Below, piece by piece: positions 5,892-59,200 of a stretch of DNA of 64,000 bases. Source of the stretch: Haliotis rubra (lineage: Eukaryota); the NCBI RefSeq assembly GCF_003918875.1, contig NW_025765292.1, forward strand, positions 744,001 through 808,000, given 5' to 3'. Position numbers and translations under genes: made by a program. The notes beneath the pieces are model-generated. The model searched no databases. It saw only the letters and a program-made list of their open reading frames with translations, and was not told where the DNA came from. Numbering within the stretch: the stretch's first letter is position 1; every line of letters starts with the position of its first letter.

Positions 5892-6023
5892 ATATGGGAG
5901 AAGGTGAAAGTTGACCGTCCCAATGCTCCAGTATGGGAGACCAGTCAGATCATCGGACAGATGTGGAGAGGTCTCAGTGATGAAGAGAAGCGAGTCTATG
6001 TTGCTGAGTATGAAGCTGATAGG
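5892..6023 (+). CDS. Coding exon: HMG box of SMARCE1/BAF57 type (IWEKVKVDRPNAPVWETSQIIGQMWRGLSDEEKRVYVAEYEADR)
   Basis: ttgtag acceptor and gtgagc donor, 132 bp, phase 0/0. The 44 aa align without gaps to the BAF57 HMG segment [44 protein letters not shown] (recalled). Not in the ORF track. Confidence 0.9.
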
Positions 6024-10663: not shown

Positions 10664-10739
10664 GAGGAATATAAGAAAGCATTTGAAGCATACCGGGTTG
10701 CTTTAGCCGATTACCAGGAAGCTGTAGGGGCTGCCCAAC
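10664..10739 (+). CDS. Coding exon: HMG helix 3 and extension (EEYKKAFEAYRVALADYQEAVGAAQ)
   Basis: Strong tctttctttgcag acceptor and gtaagc donor. Phase 0 in, matching the 5892-6023 exon; phase 1 out. Completes the HMG box (EY..A..AY). Confidence 0.88.
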
Positions 10740-11959
10740 GTAAGCTCTATGTCTCCATGTTGGCTCTGCTATCATTTAGTTTCTTGCTGTTTGGCAGTTG
10801 CAAGTTATTTAGTTTTAGTCCCAGAACCAGCTCTGTGTATCAGACCAGTACTTTCTGTTCATGTTGTTGAAATTGCTGTTGTTCAGATTGCCATGTAGTG
10901 ATTGTACAGTATTTGTGTTATAATGGATGAATATACCAAGGTGATTGTCATCATTAATGTATATCTAACCTCTTGCTGAACAAAATATGTAAGCGGTTAA
11001 CAGTCAGAATATAAAACTACTGAACTGTTCAATTGGTTAAAGTTCTTATGCTCATTTAACCAGGATCTTGATGTTTGCTACTGTTAATGTCATGTTGACA
11101 TGAAGTTTGAAGGCTTGGTCAAAGTGGCATGGACTAGTTACACTTCTCCTTCTTGCCCAGAGTCTATGAGATATACTAGGAAATATGACATCCAACTGAC
11201 AAGAAACATTAAGCATTTCTTCTGCTACCATCATGAAGTTGACGTTTCTGATTCACAGACTTTGCCATGATGATGATACATCAGGATATTGAATCAGTAT
11301 TTTGTCAAGGAGAACTCATGATGGTGTATCTTCCTGATTTATGGTCATATGATATGACAACCAAACTGACAGCCTTTATCTGACACCCCTGCCAGCAGCA
11401 ATCATTTCTTTCCACCACTATCTGACATTGGCATTTATGACACAATAGTTGTTATAAACATTTCACTCTGCAGTAGTAAAGACTTTTATCTGTTTGTAAG
11501 AAATTGAGTCTTTATGATGCAATGAAACTGTAGTCACAGTATTCCATGAGTCATAACTAAACTGGGAGGTGACACAACTGATGTCACACAACTCACAATC
11601 ACTTCACTCAGTATAATACAAGCTGCAACAATATTTGTACTTGTTTGATATTTCTCATTATTTGCTTTTTGTCAATGATTCTATGCAGCTTTTGATCAGC
11701 CATGAACTGACCTTATCTATATCATACCAACAGAGGATATTTTGACTTTTGCTTTGATCACAAGAAACCACAAGCAGACATCCTCAAATAGACATCTTGG
11801 GTGATGGACTCCATGGTAATATAGTTGTCAGACTGAATAGCAATGAAGCCGTGTCATGTCTGGGCAGCTGACAAGCTTTTTATAGTTTTGATGCATTGCT
11901 CTGAACACAGAGCCAACCAGTATACTCAGAGTGACTGAATGGAGGTCCTTTTAGTCATT

Positions 11960-16479: not shown

Positions 16480-16544
16480 AAATTGCTGAGAACAATCGCC
16501 TACTGTTAGAAGCTGAACAGGCTGCCCATCTGTATGTCCATCAG
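16480..16544 (+). CDS. Coding exon ((Q)IAENNRLLLEAEQAAHLYVHQ)
   Basis: atctttcag acceptor and consensus CAG|gtaagt donor. 65 bp; phase 1 in, matching the 10664-10739 exon; phase 0 out. Confidence 0.8.
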
Positions 16545-17384
16545 GTAAGTGTCAGCTAATTCAGTAGCAGATTGAAAGATGTCATGTAGGCAGGGTTTGA
16601 AGTGCCTCAGCTCTCCAAGTGATGTAATGAAAGTCTGTGGACATGCTGCTCTTACATGCGATATATGCATAAAAAGAATCCTGAAGAAGATTTCAGTGTG
16701 AGTTCAGGTATTTTACCATAATAAATGCTTTAATGGGATTAATGAAGGCATAGACGATGTCTTCAGAGCCATGGAAACAAACAGGTGTTTGCTATACAGC
16801 ATCTGTGTTGAGTTTACGGCCTTGTCATATTACAACCTCTGCAGAATCACAGTAACAGGTCATGCAAATTATGCTGAAAACTATGACAACTGTCATAACC
16901 TTATAATTTTATTTGCTCACACTGGTGATGATTGTAACAAGTTCATCGCTGTGGTTTGTCTAACCTATGTAAAGGGGATCAAGAGTTTTGTCTGCAGTTA
17001 CTGGTTACCAATTCCTAAATTAGTCAATTGTGGTCAAAATGTACACTGTTTCACTGTTGAATGCCAGCACAATGCAATTGTGAAAGACACACTGAACATG
17101 ATTCACTTCTGAGTGTGGTTGATAAATAAATTTGTTATTTTTCTAAGAATGTTGGGAAAGTGTGTATGAACCAAGAATATTCTATAAGAATTATTGTTGT
17201 TAAATCAGAGGAATTTGAAATGTGAAATTGGGTGCCAATGATGACATAAAAATGCTGCAATATGATGTAGGGTGTCAAACTACATTCTAATGATATCACA
17301 TAGGAAGGCAACAATCAAATGGCATCATAACCAGCTATGATATCAAGCAGGAAAACTTCAGTTAATTACATCACAAAGTGCTGT

Positions 17385-52473: not shown

Positions 52474-52580
52474 GGCCCTGTTCAACAAAGCAATCGTAGC
52501 GCTATGGTGATCGTAACTCCCATACTTTAACATAGACTTACGACTGTCATAGTGCTACAATTGCTTTGTGGAATGGGGCC
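52474..52580. mobile_element. Small PIF/Harbinger-like MITE (CWG TSD)
   Basis: CTG|ggccctgttcaacaaagcaatcgtagcgctatg ... catagtgctacaattgctttgtggaatggggcc|CTG. A decayed inverted relative lies at ~58470-58550. Confidence 0.8.
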
Positions 52581-52720
52581 CTGGACTGAAACATCTGTTT
52601 TGTATTGTGTATGTTTTTAGCCTTTACACAGATAGCAAATGACATATGTATGACAATGCTGTCTTAGTTTATAGTTTAAGGTGAGTGCAAACATATTTTG
52701 ATGATATTCCTTTCTTTTAG

Positions 52721-55286
52721 GTTCCATTCCTCAACATGCCAGTAAGAATGAAGCCGGAACCAGTGGATCCTAACCCGCCCCAGATTCCCTATGTTCAGCA
52801 GCTGGAACATGTTCTTACTAGTCCTCCAATGCTGCGTCCACCAGGACCTGGCCCTTTGTATGTTCCACATAATGTCCAAGTTCTCAACTACAATCCAGAG
52901 CCACCTCCACAACCACATCCACAACCACAAGCACCACAAGCACCACAATCTTCAGCACTAGAGAAGGAGCAGTCACAACAACCTCCGTCACTGGAACCTT
53001 CTGACAAGAATGAAGATGACAATATTGAGGATAGAATTGATGTTGATAGTATCAAAGGAATATTTGGGTGGGCAACTATAGACACTGTCAATGTTCCATA
53101 TATTGTGAGGAAACATAAGAAGTATGTGGCTGTTCGGATTGTAGAGAAGAAACTTTTGAGCAGGTACCCAAACTCTTTTCCTGATGAACTGGGAAAGAAG
53201 GAACCTCTGGTTAGTTATTTTGTGACTGAGAATGAAGCCAAACTACTTGATGAAATTAACCAGGTCCATTGTAGCTGTGAGTATGGACAGCAGGCATTTA
53301 CCTGCAAGGACCTTATAGTTGATATGGCTGAATTTGAGGATTTCTATAATCTTGTTAAAAAGACTTTTCCTGATGACTATTTAGCAAAACTAAGAGGAGA
53401 GATTCCACAACAGCAAGTTCAACAGCCAGTTGAAAATGAAGGAAAGCCAGTTGAACATGTCAAATCAGAATTGGCTAAGGTGTGTGGTTGGGTCCAAATC
53501 AACAATACAGTGTCCCCATATATCAGACGCTACTCTGGAAAGTTTGTTCCCCTATCAGTGATTAAATATGCTGCTGGTTTATTGACTGAGTTGCAGATTG
53601 AAGGAACACTGCCAACCTTAGCTGAGTGCAATTTGCTCAATGAAACTTGTAAAGCTGCTGGATTTGATTTCACATTTGGCCAGAACACAAAAGTTATCCA
53701 CTTATCAGAAGTAACACAACGATGCCAAGTTAGCATTCTTGAGCTTCCATTTGATGATCCACTGAAACATGCTCAGTACATAGACCTTCCTTCACCTACA
53801 AAAGCCCAACAGACAGCACCAAACCAAGTGCCAATAGGACAGAGACCTCCAGGCAGTGTGCAATCCCCCAATGTCAATCCATTTGCAGGATACCCTAGTG
53901 CTCCACCAAATCCTTTCTTCAACATGATGCCAATGATGCCGCAACGGTATCCCCAACAACCTATGGGCCAGTATCCCTTGCCACCTCAAGGACAACGATT
54001 TCCCTTCATGCCTCCACAAAACATGCCTAACCCGAGGTCTAACATGGGCTCTCCACCTAGACAAAGCCTTCCAAGTCCTGGTCAGATGCCCTCACAGCAT
54101 GGTCAATTCCAACCTTCTGGCCGCCCATCACCAAGTCATCCCCAGAGCAGTCCTCTGAGCATGATGTCTCACATGGCTCAAAATGGACAGATGCATCCAA
54201 TGCAGGGGGCATTCCCAGGGCAGATACATCCAGGAAGCATAGGACCCATGAATCCAATGATTCGCCCCGGTCAAACTACACCCATCAGTCAAGGTCCTGG
54301 TATGTCTCCACTGGGGTTAGGTCAAGGCATGAGAATGCCTATGACTGCCCCCACTGAGATGATGCCAAGAGGCCCAATGCTGCACACTGCTCAGATGCCA
54401 CAGTTGTCACCATCTCAAAGTGCTATCTCTCGTTTTCCTAATCCTCATAGCATGCTCCCTGGTCAGCAGATGAATAATCAAAATGGAAAACTGGCAAGCA
54501 CTCCTAATTCTACATATGCAGCAACATCTCCAGCTGCTTCCTCTATATCCAGTAGTCCAAAGACTGTTCCAATCTCTGCACCTGCTCCTGCCAGTATCCC
54601 TACAATGAATGGTGATGCTCCTCAACGTCCACCATCCAATCAGAGCTCGGGCCAAAGCAGGTCTAGTTCGCGGTCATCCTTAGTTGACAAAATCAGTGGA
54701 GTAGTGCTGAATGGAAAGAGCATATCATGCATGCATTTGGATCATGCAGAGAAACCAGGCAAATTCTGCTTAGTGGAAGCTGTGTGTAAATTATATTTTT
54801 CACAAAGTAGTATGAATGAATTTCTCTATGCCCTACAGAATGTGTTGAAGATTCCTTTACATTCATGTAATGAAGATGAAGAAAAGGCTTTCATTCAGTA
54901 TTACAACCTGCCAGTGAGCGTTTTAAAATGTAACAAGATGATCAGTCTGACAGACCTTGAGAAGTACTTCCCACAAATGTCCTACATGTTCAGTCAATGT
55001 GATACACCCACAGAAGGTTCTGAGGACCAGAATGGCACTGCAGGTGATAAGCCTACCACTGATTCTCCTGTACTAGCTTCAGATACCACTTTATCTGCCC
55101 CACCAGCAGAAACTCCAGCAGATGCCAGTCAAAGTTCAACAAGCCTCAAACGGCCTAGTCTTACTTCCCTTTCATCTCCCCCACCTCCAAAACAGCCATG
55201 TCGAAGGCTTGAGGAAATGGTCCAAAAACTCAAGCAATCTCAGAACACAAATGATGGGTCTGAGAAGCCCACAGAGGAACAACAAG
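52721..55286 (+). CDS. Large coding exon: uncharacterised nuclear protein with three Ski/Sno/Dac-like domains and a P/Q-rich region
   Basis: ttcctttcttttag acceptor at 52720, open frame of 855 codons and AAG|gtaagt donor at 55286. ATG at 52736 lies in caacATG context. Domain 3 (LNGKSISCM..KFCL..LKIPLHSCNEDE..LPVSVLKCNKMISLTDLEK) parallels the Ski/Dac domain. The last 23 aa of the ORF-track entry are intron read-through. Confidence 0.95.
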
Positions 55287-56032
55287 GTAAGTTACTGTCA
55301 TTACGTCTGGATAATTACTATGAAAATGACTTACTTCAATTAGGTTTCAACTCTTAAATCTTGCAATTCATGCATAGGTTTTCTCCACAAGTACAGTTGA
55401 CCCAGTTTAACTGGTATTTAGGGGACCATTCGAAAAGCAATTATATTACCGGTAATGCCATTTCTTTCATCACAGTGTATGATAACACAGGCATGATATA
55501 AAATGCTAAAAGAATTTTTTTCATAATTTCACATGATAATAAAGACCATCAACGATGTATTATATGCCACATAGATTTGACATACAGAATAACTATCAAT
55601 CTGTGGCAATGTGTACTTACTGAAATGAAATGTAAGTGTCATTAGTTGTAGCGAGGAATGGTACTTACCAATTAGTGTGTGTCTGTGTGGGGGGTGTTGA
55701 TGCTTTTTCAACACTCAATTCATCATAGGATTCTTCCCTCATCAATTTTCCAGGACGGTCCAAGAATTTGGCTCCATTAATCAACTATATGTAGTTCAGA
55801 TGTGAGGCAATGGAAGAAATTGTTTCATTGATATTCCGGGAAACACACTTAAAATTATAAGTAACTGGGGAGGATTTTGTGGCTGTATTATTTTGAAGTA
55901 CAATTCAAAATCTTAATCTCCAAATTTTGAAACTGATTAAAAATGGGTCAGAGGCCATTTACAAGCATAAAATCAGACTTGTTCAAGTCTTTTGTCCATG
56001 TTATTGGTTCCTCATCAATGTCCATGTTGCAG

Positions 56033-56127
56033 AGGAAGACCAGAAGCCTGTCACTCTTCCTTCCCCTCCAGTAGCAACTGATGAGGGGGAAACTGGTAGG
56101 AAAGAAGAAGTCATTGTGCTAGACTGA
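56033..56127 (+). CDS. Terminal coding exon ((E)EDQKPVTLPSPPVATDEGETGRKEEVIVLD*)
   Basis: tgttgcag acceptor; phase 1 matches the 55286 donor. Ends in a SIM-like EEVIVLD and TGA. Confidence 0.88.
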
Positions 56128-56171
56128 GCCAGCTAAAGAAGAGAAGAGTTTTACTTAAACAGTTTGGAGAG

Positions 56172-56255
56172 GTGCTGATCTATGTGTTGCTGAAGGACTG
56201 GCGTGTGTATGATGTGCTGATCTATGTGTTGCTGAAGGACTGGCGTGTGTATGAT
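56172..56255. repeat. Exact 42-bp tandem duplication
   Basis: gtgctgatctatgtgttgctgaaggactggcgtgtgtatgat occurs twice. Confidence 0.95.
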
Positions 56256-59200
56256 CTCCAAGAACACTGTGCATGGAGTTTCTTCCAGACTGATTTGAAA
56301 AATGGACCACCAGTATTCTTGTGAAAGTCAGTCATTTATTGTGGTCAGTTGAATGATGTGTACAAATTACATTTTTGAGAACTTAAGTCACACTCTGTTG
56401 GTCAGTGATTAATGTTTATTTTGTGAGAACTGTTTTCATAAACTTACACAGAAGACACAACACTGGGCAAAGGACATGAAGCACTCTCACAAACTTGAGG
56501 ATGAATATTGGAGAAGACAGTGTAAAGTCTTGTTTGAAACCCTGAGGTAATTGTTGTGACCCATAACTGAAGATATTTTGTCTTCTTTTGTGATCAAGAA
56601 CAAGAAATTCATTTTGTTTTTGGACTCTGAAGCATTTTGTGACATAGTATACAATGCTGTCACATTATTTATTTTGCAGTGTACTGTTCTTTCTTTGGAG
56701 AATTCAGGGTATCAAGTGTAATGGTGCAACACACTTTACAACTGCATTTATTGCTTATATGTGATGAAAAACTACTAAATGTATCTTGAGGCAAAATGTT
56801 TATGCACGATTATTTTATGAGAATGAGCATCAGAAACAGAGAAGCTGTTCTGTGAATGCAGCTGTTTGTTTTTGTGTGTGACATGGCTTCCTGAATCAAA
56901 GGACCATCCTTGGTGATGACCACAGTTGGCGCATGTTAAGTATGCATGTGGTAAAGATTTCTTTGAATCTCTGTTATTCGTGTCAGAGAGAAAGGAAGAG
57001 GGTACAGCCAGAACCACAAGGAAGAGCTGTATGTGGGGTTTCTCTTGAAAGAGTGACCATCTTCAAGCTGGAAATGAGAGTGAATAATTGGCTACCGTAC
57101 GTGATCGGATCATTCAACACAAGGCTGCTATTGACAGTTACTGATAAAAGAGTTTCCACTGCCAAGTCAGAATGGTGACCTGAGCTTATGCAGGGGTTTG
57201 ATCACAAAGGAGTTCCATGACAGTATATCATTGACAGTGTGAGGAGTCCTGCCAAGGGAACAGTTGTTTCCTTTTTTTGTAGTTGTCTTTGCACTAGCCT
57301 TCATTTATTTTTGTTTAGGCCACTGCTACTTCCATGACACCTTTTGCATCAAGGCTAAAATAATTCTTTGATTCTCAGGCACCACTTGCATCTAGACAAC
57401 TGTGCTTGTGAGCTTCAAGTATATATGTTACCATTTTGACCAAAAAATACAGCACACACTTGCACCATTTTGTCAGAGTCCATCTGAGAATTCATTTTGT
57501 TTTGTTGCCTGTATATGTTATCCATGATAATCCATATAATTTGTGAGGAATATTACTGAAGATGAACTTGAACTAAAACTCTATGAAGATAATCATGATC
57601 AAAGATGTGTGAAATGTTTACATGCTGAGTTACCATTTTTGAGAATGGTCCATATGCAGAGGTATGCAGTATTTGTTTATTAATTTTTTTGTTGCTGTGT
57701 TTGTTTTTTCACTGAAATGAAATCCATGTACATTGTTTAAGACTAGTTACAAATGTTTAGTGTACTTGTGTGTCTTTGACTTGTAACATATACTACACAT
57801 AGTGCTGTGTGAATATTGAAATGTAATTCAACTGGAAATACCTGATGGCAATCTGTAATATCTTTTGTTGTTTTTCACATTTAGGAATGCACTGGAGCAT
57901 TAACTGAAAACACAATCCCATTTGAGAACAATGTCTGCCAGAGTGTAAGGACTGCTGTGTTTAATGATAACGTCACACAATGTACAGTGGATATCAAGAC
58001 AGACATGTTCTAATGTGCACTTATTACCTTAGAATAAGAACAACAAAGCTATCGTTAAATTCACGCAAGAGTTAGAAAACCTTTTACTGGTTGTGATGTG
58101 AAGTAACACTACATATTAGTAATTTTGTCAGCTATTTCCAGGAGAATACTATGTCCGCTTTTGTGACCTGATTCATGCAAGAATCTGCTCGGAATTGTTA
58201 ATAGATGAAGTGTTAGATATGTCAGCACACAGAATTTTAACTTTCATACAAATTAAGGCATAACATTTTACCATATTGCAAATATTTTGTTAAGAAATGA
58301 GATCATACAAAACTTTGCAGTATTTTACTGATCTGTTTAACAATAAGACTGAATGCGTGTAGGTGAGAACATTTGATTGTCCCAAACAACCTGATCAAAT
58401 AGCCCTACTTCCTAATTCATACTGGATGAAACACAAGCCACCTTAAGGATCAGGGTCCACTTAAACAATACAATCTTAGTTCTACGACTATCATAAGTCT
58501 GTGTGAAAGTCTGGGCGTTATAACTGTTGTGGCACTAAGATCACTTTGTGCTTGTAGACCGATGAAGTCATGTCCTTCTTAAAATTCACAAGTTTGTTCT
58601 CTTGTGTTGAATTGTTAGTCATTCAATAATCTGTTAATACCATGCCATTACTTAGACCAACTTAGATTCTATTTAACCATGTATGTTTTTGTATACATAT
58701 CCTGTACAGAGCTTCCACTTCACAGTGCTATATGTGTTGTGATCATGTGTCACTACTTATCATAGTCAGTTTCTATATTGGCTGTTGTATGTCTTGTTTT
58801 TAGCAGGTTATTATTGAGTGTATGTGTTTGACATTCATTGGCATCATTTTGCCTGAGATTCTCACTAGTGGTCTGTTGTATGGAACCGAGCAAACCTTTG
58901 AATCTTTGTAACAAGGTTTTCTTCCTGATTTAACATTCATTGAATTTTCAAATAATGCCAAAATATATCATTTAATGCATATTGTAGAAAGGCATGGTTG
59001 TCGTATAAATATTTTTTCTAATTGTTGGAACTGATTTTAAGTTGTATGTGATCAAAACCTTTTCACCTGTAAATCATAAGATAAAACATGTTCTCATTGA
59101 CTGTATCAATTATGTTTTTTGTTTTCCAGCATTGACCTTTGAGTAAAATATGAGCAGCGGCACTACAATGTTATTTTGCAGATAAAATGCAGTACATTGC

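What the first reader, a model, noticed from the sequence alone, without database searches (positions are those of the whole stretch)
53051..54991. Protein with three Ski/Sno/Dachshund-like domains
Seen: three ~95-105-aa globular blocks (D1 ~53051-53371, D2 ~53480-53753, D3 ~54689-54991) separated by Q/P-rich linkers. D1 and D2 are clear internal repeats (GWATIDTVNVPYIVRKHKKYVAV vs GWVQINNTVSPYIRRYSGKFVPL; TENEAKLLDE vs TLAECNLLNE). Known: the Ski/Sno/Dac domain runs LEGETISCF..EKRLCL..LHIYCSRCTADQ..LPFSAPSCGLITKTDAER, which D3 follows motif by motif, and canonical Ski, SnoN, Dach and SKOR proteins carry only one such domain. Inference: D1 and D2 are more divergent copies of the same winged-helix-like fold (D1 ends LIVDMAEFEDFY, compare Dach KLISRKDFETLY). 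That would define a multi-Ski/Dac-domain regulator family I cannot name.
Basis: partly seen in the sequence, partly recalled or inferred. Interest (0 to 1): 0.85.

Follow-up and report, generated by a model that had tools for sequence, protein, structure and literature searches.

The report
Unnamed protostome protein with three Ski/Dachshund-type domains
This abalone gene encodes an uncharacterised nuclear-type protein built from three copies of the fold found once in the Ski, SnoN and Dachshund regulators; it is conserved from molluscs to insects (fly CG43736), so it is a real, unnamed branch of a known domain superfamily, not a new kind of system.

Summary
The stretch lies in the main coding exon (52721-55285, +) of Haliotis rubra LOC124268062, which is transcribed and spliced. 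D3 is a divergent Dachshund-homology domain (DHD). Its Pfam Ski_Sno_DHD match has E 1.4e-4 and 22 bits, just under the 24.5-bit cut-off. Its only good Foldseek hits are the SnoN, DACH1 and SKI DHDs (TM 0.70-0.80).

D2 is a true internal repeat of D1 (hhalign 98%, E 2e-13), but shorter. On its own it did not retrieve DHD structures, so it is a derived copy whose fold is inferred.

The D1-D2-linker-D3 layout is conserved in molluscs, annelids and arthropods (693 cluster representatives); a rotifer protein shows D1 and D2. None of the checked members has a significant Pfam domain hit, apart from the abalone HMG box. The fly orthologue CG43736 is uncharacterised and is listed as an HP1a co-purifying protein.

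Abalone long isoforms add a SMARCE1/BAF57-type HMG box. The scan had noted those exons separately. The likely role is a chromatin or transcription co-regulator scaffold, which is an inference. Verdict: a new variant of a known kind, of moderate interest.

The parts
5892..6023 (+). Upstream exon encoding the middle of a SMARCE1/BAF57-type HMG box (aa 58-101 of H. rubra isoform X1); used only by the long isoforms
   Evidence: tblastn 100%; Pfam HMG_box E 3.6e-15; best PDB sequence match SMARCE1, E 3.7e-22
10664..10741 (+). Exon encoding the end of the HMG box and the following helix
   Evidence: tblastn
16480..16544 (+). Short exon (ending ...LYVHQ), donor GT at 16545; spliced to the main exon
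   Evidence: Sequence. The 30-letter loose end of RNA-like contig X1 before 52719 is identical to 16513-16542
52721..55285 (+). Main coding exon (acceptor AG at 52719-52720, donor GT at 55286); holds D1, D2, the linker and D3
   Evidence: RNA-like contigs cover exactly this span and skip 746 nt (GT..AG) to 56031, while the DNA run covers the introns too; sequence
52736..52738 (+). ATG used by the short isoforms (X6, 881 aa). A similar N-terminus (M-P-V/I-R...) begins the Owenia protein and another homologue
53051..53371 (+). D1: Dachshund-homology-domain fold, the most conserved block of the family
53480..53755 (+). D2: shortened internal repeat of D1 (derived DHD; fold assignment inferred)
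   Evidence: hhalign D1 vs D2 98%, E 2.3e-13; similar start and order of secondary structure elements in the model; alone it finds only its own family, then Bro-N/P22_AR_N at TM below 0.5
53756..54688 (+). About 310-aa disordered linker rich in P, S, Q, M and G
   Evidence: Composition; length and sequence vary between species
54689..55015 (+). D3: divergent Ski/Sno/Dac DHD
   Evidence: Pfam PF02437 E 1.4e-4, 22.0 bits against cut-off 24.5, profile positions 16-104 of 109; Foldseek E 5e-4, TM 0.70-0.80, rmsd 2.1-2.9 to 3eq5, 1l8r and 1sbx; Atlas TM 0.63 to c-SKI and DACH2 clusters
55190..55231 (+). Conserved short motif KQPCRRLEE-x-VQ-+-L in the tail after D3 (lophotrochozoans)
   Evidence: Seen in the C-terminal tails of molluscs and others
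56032..56127 (+). Last coding exon with stop. It ends in EEVIVLD, a SUMO-interaction-motif-like hydrophobic core beside acidic residues (56104-56124)
   Evidence: Joint 55284>56031 in contigs X1 and X3; tblastn; the V/I-I-V/I-L/I-D end is conserved in molluscs and Owenia; the SIM reading is inference from the known consensus

Best explanation
The stretch is the main exon of Haliotis rubra LOC124268062, a member of an unnamed, protostome-wide protein family whose fly member is CG43736. The protein has an N-terminal tandem pair of domains: D1, and its shortened duplicate D2. A long disordered P/S/Q-rich linker follows, then a C-terminal domain D3. D1 and D3 adopt the Dachshund-homology-domain (winged-helix-like) fold of Ski, SnoN, Dachshund and SKIDA1. 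D2 derives from the same unit. The most likely role is a nuclear scaffold or co-regulator. Its near-neutral DHD modules would dock partner proteins, as the SKI DHD does with co-repressors. The disordered linker, and in lophotrochozoans a C-terminal SIM-like motif, would add multivalent contacts. In abalone, long isoforms from upstream exons add a SMARCE1/BAF57-type HMG box that would give non-specific, DNA-bending chromatin contact. Shown here: the gene structure, its transcription and splicing, the D1/D2 repeat, the DHD fold of D1 and D3, the conservation of the architecture, and the HMG-box type. Inferred: the DHD fold of D2, nuclear localisation, the co-regulator function, and SUMO binding.
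For: Gene and isoforms. Transcription and splicing, including the link from the 16480-16544 exon to the main exon. D3 is a DHD. D1 is a DHD. D1 and D2 are homologous: plus cross-hits of the D2 profile on D1. D1 and D3 are related: hhalign E 2.7e-5, 91 colinear columns. The architecture is conserved in 198 of 307 fetched relatives, fly included. The family has 693 representatives at E up to 1e-3, from molluscs, annelids, a rotifer, chelicerates, myriapods and insects. The HMG box is nearest SMARCE1. CG43736 is listed among HP1a BioTAP co-purifying proteins (PMC7465937). Domain net charge is about 0.
Against: No Pfam model reaches its curated threshold on any of the three domains. Only 5 of 27 D3 sequences touch Ski_Sno_DHD at E below 1. 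D2 alone did not retrieve DHD structures; its nearest foreign folds were Bro-N/P22_AR_N at TM below 0.5. D2 vs D3 hhalign is not significant (E 0.047). Sequence identity of D1 to solved DHDs is only about 8%. There is no functional data for any family member beyond a mass-spectrometry list. The HMG box was seen only in Haliotis models among 312 fetched proteins. The contig evidence shown reaches only the last upstream exon, not the HMG-box exons themselves.
Confidence: 0.78

Rival explanations
1. Only D3 is a Ski/Dac-type domain. D1 and D2 belong to a different winged-helix-like or KilA-N/Bro-N/APSES-like family that merely resembles the DHD.
For: No Pfam hit for D1 or D2. About 8% identity to solved DHDs. 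D2 alone lands nearest Bro-N/P22_AR_N. APSES (Mbp1, PCG2), Bqt4 and granulovirus Orf22 N-terminal domains appear in the lower ranks for D1 and D3.
Confidence: 0.1
2. The family is the protostome orthologue of a known vertebrate DHD gene, most plausibly SKIDA1, which also has an N-terminal DHD, a long low-complexity middle and a C-terminal module. On that reading it is not a separate family.
For: The SKIDA1 clusters are the nearest named structural neighbours of D1 (TM 0.70-0.71). A SKIDA1/EPOP cluster aligned 131 residues across model residues 8-224. The overall layouts are similar.
Against: No EPOP domain (PF15223) hit at E up to 0.1-1 in any scanned member. The margins over c-SKI are small (0.71 vs 0.68). 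No sequence-level link was obtained. SKIDA1 is not known to carry a second or third DHD (my own knowledge, not tested here).
Confidence: 0.1
3. The three-domain picture is an artefact of structure prediction on a shallow alignment of close relatives.
For: The alignments used had 27-33 sequences, all from the family. pTM of the two-domain model is only 0.51.
Against: Per-domain pLDDT is 90-97. An independent method (ESMFold in the Atlas) gives the same D1 result on another species. Pfam gives a sequence-only hit for D3. The low pTM reflects the flexible linker between D1 and D2.
Confidence: 0.02

Closest known systems
SKI / SnoN (SKIL) Dachshund-homology domain (PDB 1SBX, 3EQ5; Pfam PF02437)
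   Different: One DHD per protein in Ski/Sno against three here. There is no SAND-like SMAD4-binding domain (PF08782) and no C-terminal coiled coil. The Pfam score is below the gathering threshold.
Dachshund / DACH1 DHD (PDB 1L8R)
   Different: No sequence-level match. The second Dachshund box was not looked for by name and has no Pfam hit. The fly genome has dac as a separate gene from CG43736 (my own knowledge).
SKIDA1 (SKI/DACH domain containing 1)
   Same: Nearest named structural neighbour of D1 in the ESM Atlas (TM 0.70-0.71). N-terminal DHD followed by a long low-complexity region. Poorly characterised and chromatin-linked.
   Different: SKIDA1 carries a C-terminal EPOP domain, absent here. 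A tandem D2 and a C-terminal DHD are not known in SKIDA1. The SKIDA1 clusters are chordate and cnidarian, while this family was seen only in protostomes.
Drosophila melanogaster CG43736
   Same: Orthologue: D1 147-251, D2 264-347, D3 1241-1337 in the near-identical D. mauritiana protein (P0174), with a long Q/H-rich middle.
   Different: No HMG box. The C-terminus ends in a basic KR-rich motif rather than the VIVLD-type end. Uncharacterised apart from its listing as an HP1a co-purifying protein.
SMARCE1 / BAF57 HMG box
   Same: The N-terminal HMG box of the abalone long isoforms is closest to it (E 3.7e-22, against 3.5e-14 for TFAM, the next family).
   Different: Only the HMG box and a short following helix are shared. 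The rest of SMARCE1 (the coiled coil that docks into BAF) is absent and is replaced by the three-DHD body.

Membership tests
Pfam Ski_Sno_DHD (PF02437) | Score at or above the curated gathering threshold (24.5 bits) | tested here: not met
   D3 scores 22.0 bits, E 1.4e-4. 5 of 27 D3 orthologues match at E below 1. D1 and D2 have no hit. Full-length orthologues have no hit.
DHD structural superfamily (Ski/SnoN/Dach fold) | D3 superposes on solved DHDs over the whole domain, well above other folds | tested here: met
   Ranks 1-12 are all DHD chains, TM 0.63-0.80, rmsd 2.1-3.1. The next hit has TM 0.43. Atlas neighbours carry PF02437.
DHD structural superfamily (Ski/SnoN/Dach fold) | D1 superposes on solved DHDs over the whole domain, well above other folds | tested here: met
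DHD structural superfamily (Ski/SnoN/Dach fold) | D2 superposes on solved DHDs | tested here: inconclusive
The Atlas model of the Lottia D2 found no DHD cluster. Homology to D1 is strong (98%, E 2.3e-13). The element order is similar but lacks one helix and has a shorter last helix.
Ski/Sno/SKOR proteins | SAND-like SMAD4-binding domain (PF08782) after the DHD | tested here: not met
   No PF08782 hit at E up to 1 (window protein) or 0.1 (relatives).
SKIDA1 | C-terminal EPOP domain (PF15223) | tested here: not met
   No PF15223 hit.
Dachshund | Second conserved box (DD2/EYA-interacting region) and orthology to dac | not tested
   No Dachshund sequence was on hand. The nearest fly protein retrieved was CG43736; that dac is a separate fly gene is my own knowledge.
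HMG-box proteins, SMARCE1 type (long isoforms only) | HMG_box Pfam match above threshold, with the best match to SMARCE1 | tested here: met
   PF00505 56.6 bits against cut-off 25.4. SMARCE1 E 3.7e-22. The rest of SMARCE1 is not present.

The most novel reading that the evidence does not exclude
This is an ancient, protostome-wide and so far undescribed branch of the Ski/Dac superfamily. It would be the only one with several DHDs in one chain. It would act as a heterochromatin- or HP1-associated scaffold, and in abalone it has captured a BAF57-type HMG box. It might be the missing protostome counterpart of SKIDA1.
Probability: 0.3. Interest if true: 0.6.

Novelty: new variant of a known kind. 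Interest (0 to 1): 0.5.

Why it matters
DHD proteins (Ski, SnoN, Dachshund, SKOR, SKIDA1) are central co-regulators of TGF-beta signalling, organ determination and Polycomb function, and each is described with a single DHD. A conserved family with two clear DHD folds and a third derived copy, present in Drosophila as an unstudied gene (CG43736), gives a tractable entry point. The fly gene can be knocked out, tagged and tested for HP1a or co-repressor binding. The finding also shows that about two thirds of the ordered part of this protein family is invisible to Pfam, so a new Pfam or InterPro entry could be built from the alignments made here. The abalone HMG-box isoforms are an example of exon capture that joins a DNA-bending module to a docking scaffold.

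Tried and rejected
- **PDB sequence searches.** Sequence and profile searches with the whole protein and with the A1 and A2 alignments gave only chance hits: thermonuclease and designed TPR repeats.
- **Pfam on orthologues.** Scans of ten full-length orthologues twice over gave nothing but the abalone HMG box.
- **Protein-language-model search.** A feature search with D2 against named Atlas clusters gave no usable hit.
- **D2 against DHDs.** In the D1-D2 model, D1 took all the DHD rows.
- **Literature.** Searches for tandem or multiple DHDs and for SKIDA1 together with DHD found nothing.
- **Bacterial promoter/terminator scan.** One search is irrelevant to this eukaryotic gene and is disregarded.
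- **PxVxL motifs.** I considered reading HP1-type PxVxL motifs into the sequence and dropped it, because no conserved match was evident.
- **Canonical DHD profile.** I did not type Ski, Dach or SKIDA1 sequences from memory to build a comparison profile.

Full report
**What is there**

Frame +2 of the window holds an 873-codon ORF at 52736-55357. The window is abalone DNA. The ORF product is 100% identical over 850 residues to all six predicted isoforms of Haliotis rubra LOC124268062. It is 97% identical to H. asinina and 94% to H. rufescens and H. cracherodii.

The ORF is really an exon, 52721-55285. It has an AG acceptor at 52719-52720. A final exon lies at 56032-56127.

Contigs from three small runs behave as transcript assemblies. 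They cover only 52719-55284 and 56031-56366 and join the two through a GT..AG skip of 746 nt. A large DNA run covers the introns as well. The gene is therefore expressed and spliced as modelled.

**Upstream exons and the HMG box**

The long NCBI isoforms (1004-1034 aa) begin with exons at 5892-6023, 10664-10741 and 16480-16544. An earlier part lies beyond the window's 5' end.

These exons encode an HMG box (Pfam PF00505, 56.6 bits). Its best solved relative is SMARCE1/BAF57 at E 3.7e-22, eight orders of magnitude better than TFAM, the next family.

One transcript-like contig carries 52 extra letters before 52719. The last 30 of them are identical to 16513-16542. So the last upstream exon is spliced to the main exon. 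The contigs that reach further upstream were not printed, so the link to the HMG-box exons themselves rests on the gene models of four Haliotis species.

Short isoforms start at the ATG at 52736. The Owenia protein and one other homologue begin with a similar N-terminus. Among 312 fetched relatives, only Haliotis proteins carry the HMG box.

**D3**

Pfam Ski_Sno_DHD matches D3 at E 1.4e-4 and 22.0 bits over profile positions 16-104 of 109. This is below the 24.5-bit gathering score. Only 5 of 27 orthologous D3 sequences reach E below 1.

An AlphaFold2 model built from 27 orthologues has pLDDT 88.7 and pTM 0.79. In Foldseek against the PDB, its first twelve hits are all chains of the SnoN, DACH1 and SKI DHDs (E from 5e-4, TM 0.63-0.80, rmsd 2.1-3.1, 16-22% identity). 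The next hit falls to TM 0.43. In the ESM Atlas, the nearest named neighbours are c-SKI, DACH2 and SKIDA1-type clusters. D3 is a divergent but genuine DHD.

**D1**

D1 has no Pfam or PDB sequence match. The D1-D2 model has pLDDT 87, with 90-97 inside the domains and a disordered 127-142 linker.

A second, independent check used the ESM Atlas's own model of the Lottia orthologue. Its D1 gives TM 0.71 and 0.70 to SKIDA1 clusters, 0.68 to c-SKI and 0.67 to a PF25867 'DHD' cluster.

With family-wide profiles, D1 aligns to D3 colinearly over 91 columns (hhalign E 2.7e-5, probability 74%).

**D2**

D2 is a true repeat of D1. Pairwise BLASTP gives E 5e-5. hhalign gives 97-98% probability with E 1e-10 to 2.3e-13. 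The D2 profile also cross-hits D1 in many relatives.

D2 is shorter. About 10-14 residues around the second helix are missing, and the last helix is shorter and followed by an extra strand.

The Atlas model of the Lottia D2 retrieves only its own family (TM 0.66-0.71). After that come Bro-N/P22_AR_N domains below TM 0.5, with no DHD cluster. D2 vs D3 is not significant (E 0.047). So D2 is best described as a derived copy of a DHD, with the fold inferred from homology to D1.

**The family**

A profile of D1-D2 finds 693 representatives (50% identity clusters) at E up to 1e-3, and 187 at E up to 1e-30.

Named members come from:
- gastropods, bivalves and cephalopods;
- annelids (Owenia, Capitella, Paralvinella);
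- a rotifer;
- a scorpion and a millipede;
- many insects.

No deuterostome appeared among the names seen, but only the best 150 hits were listed. The order D1, D2, variable low-complexity linker, D3 is kept in 198 of 307 fetched relatives; most of the rest look like fragments. The near-identical D. mauritiana protein P0174 has D1 at 147-251, D2 at 264-347 and D3 at 1241-1337. The D1/D2 duplication therefore predates the split of lophotrochozoans and arthropods.

The D. melanogaster member is CG43736, annotated as uncharacterised. The paper library holds it in two papers only. One is a review table that lists it among proteins co-purifying with HP1a in the BioTAP study of Alekseyenko et al. 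2014 (PMC7465937). Ten diverse full-length members have no significant Pfam hit at all.

**Other conserved features**

Lophotrochozoan proteins share a KQPCRRLEE-type motif after D3. They end in an acidic-flanked V/I-I-V/I-L/I-D string (EEVIVLD in abalone). This fits the textbook consensus of a SUMO-interaction motif, which is my inference. Arthropod proteins instead end soon after D3 in a basic KR-rich string.

All three domains are close to neutral across the family, with median net charge 0 and pI about 7. That speaks more for protein docking, as in SKI, than for a strongly basic DNA-binding surface.

**Mechanism proposed**

The protein is most likely a nuclear co-regulator scaffold. In this model, up to three DHD-type modules, separated by a long disordered region, recruit partner proteins. 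Chromatin contact would come through partners (HP1a is a candidate from the fly data) and, in abalone long isoforms, directly through the BAF57-type HMG box.

This reading is inferred from the known roles of DHDs and HMG boxes. No family member has been studied functionally.

**Comparison and novelty**

The fold is known, and the proteins that carry it are described with one DHD each. This family fails the defining extras of Ski/Sno/SKOR (no SMAD4-binding domain) and of SKIDA1 (no EPOP domain). It also scores below the Pfam threshold. So it is not a member of those families, although two of its domains work from the same fold.

I found no paper describing a multi-DHD protein. It remains possible, at about 10%, that the family is the protostome counterpart of SKIDA1.

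I rate it a new variant of a known kind, of moderate interest.

Noticed in passing
An RNA-like contig joins the last of them (16480-16544) to 52721. Only the HMG box and a short helix resemble SMARCE1.
   Followed up: partly
window 52485-52567: A short stretch in the intron just upstream of the main exon has an enormous summed contig depth (about 5e5 in the DNA run, against about 57 around it). Many contigs break there, in the RNA-like runs too. It looks like a very high-copy dispersed repeat.
   Followed up: no
window 52923: One transcript-like contig (run X2) carries an in-frame 9-nt insertion (ACCACAAGC) in the P/Q-rich N-terminal region. The same region differs in length between H. rubra and H. 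asinina, so it is a length-polymorphic low-complexity tract.
   Followed up: no
window 56104-56124: The C-terminal EEVIVLD is conserved as V/I-I-V/I-L/I-D(D) at the very end of mollusc and Owenia orthologues. It resembles a SUMO-interaction motif. Arthropod orthologues lack it and end in a basic KR-rich string.
   Followed up: partly
window 55286-55357: The last 24 codons of the mechanical ORF (after ...EEQQ) are intron read-through. RNA-like contigs leave the ORF at 55284/5.
   Followed up: yes
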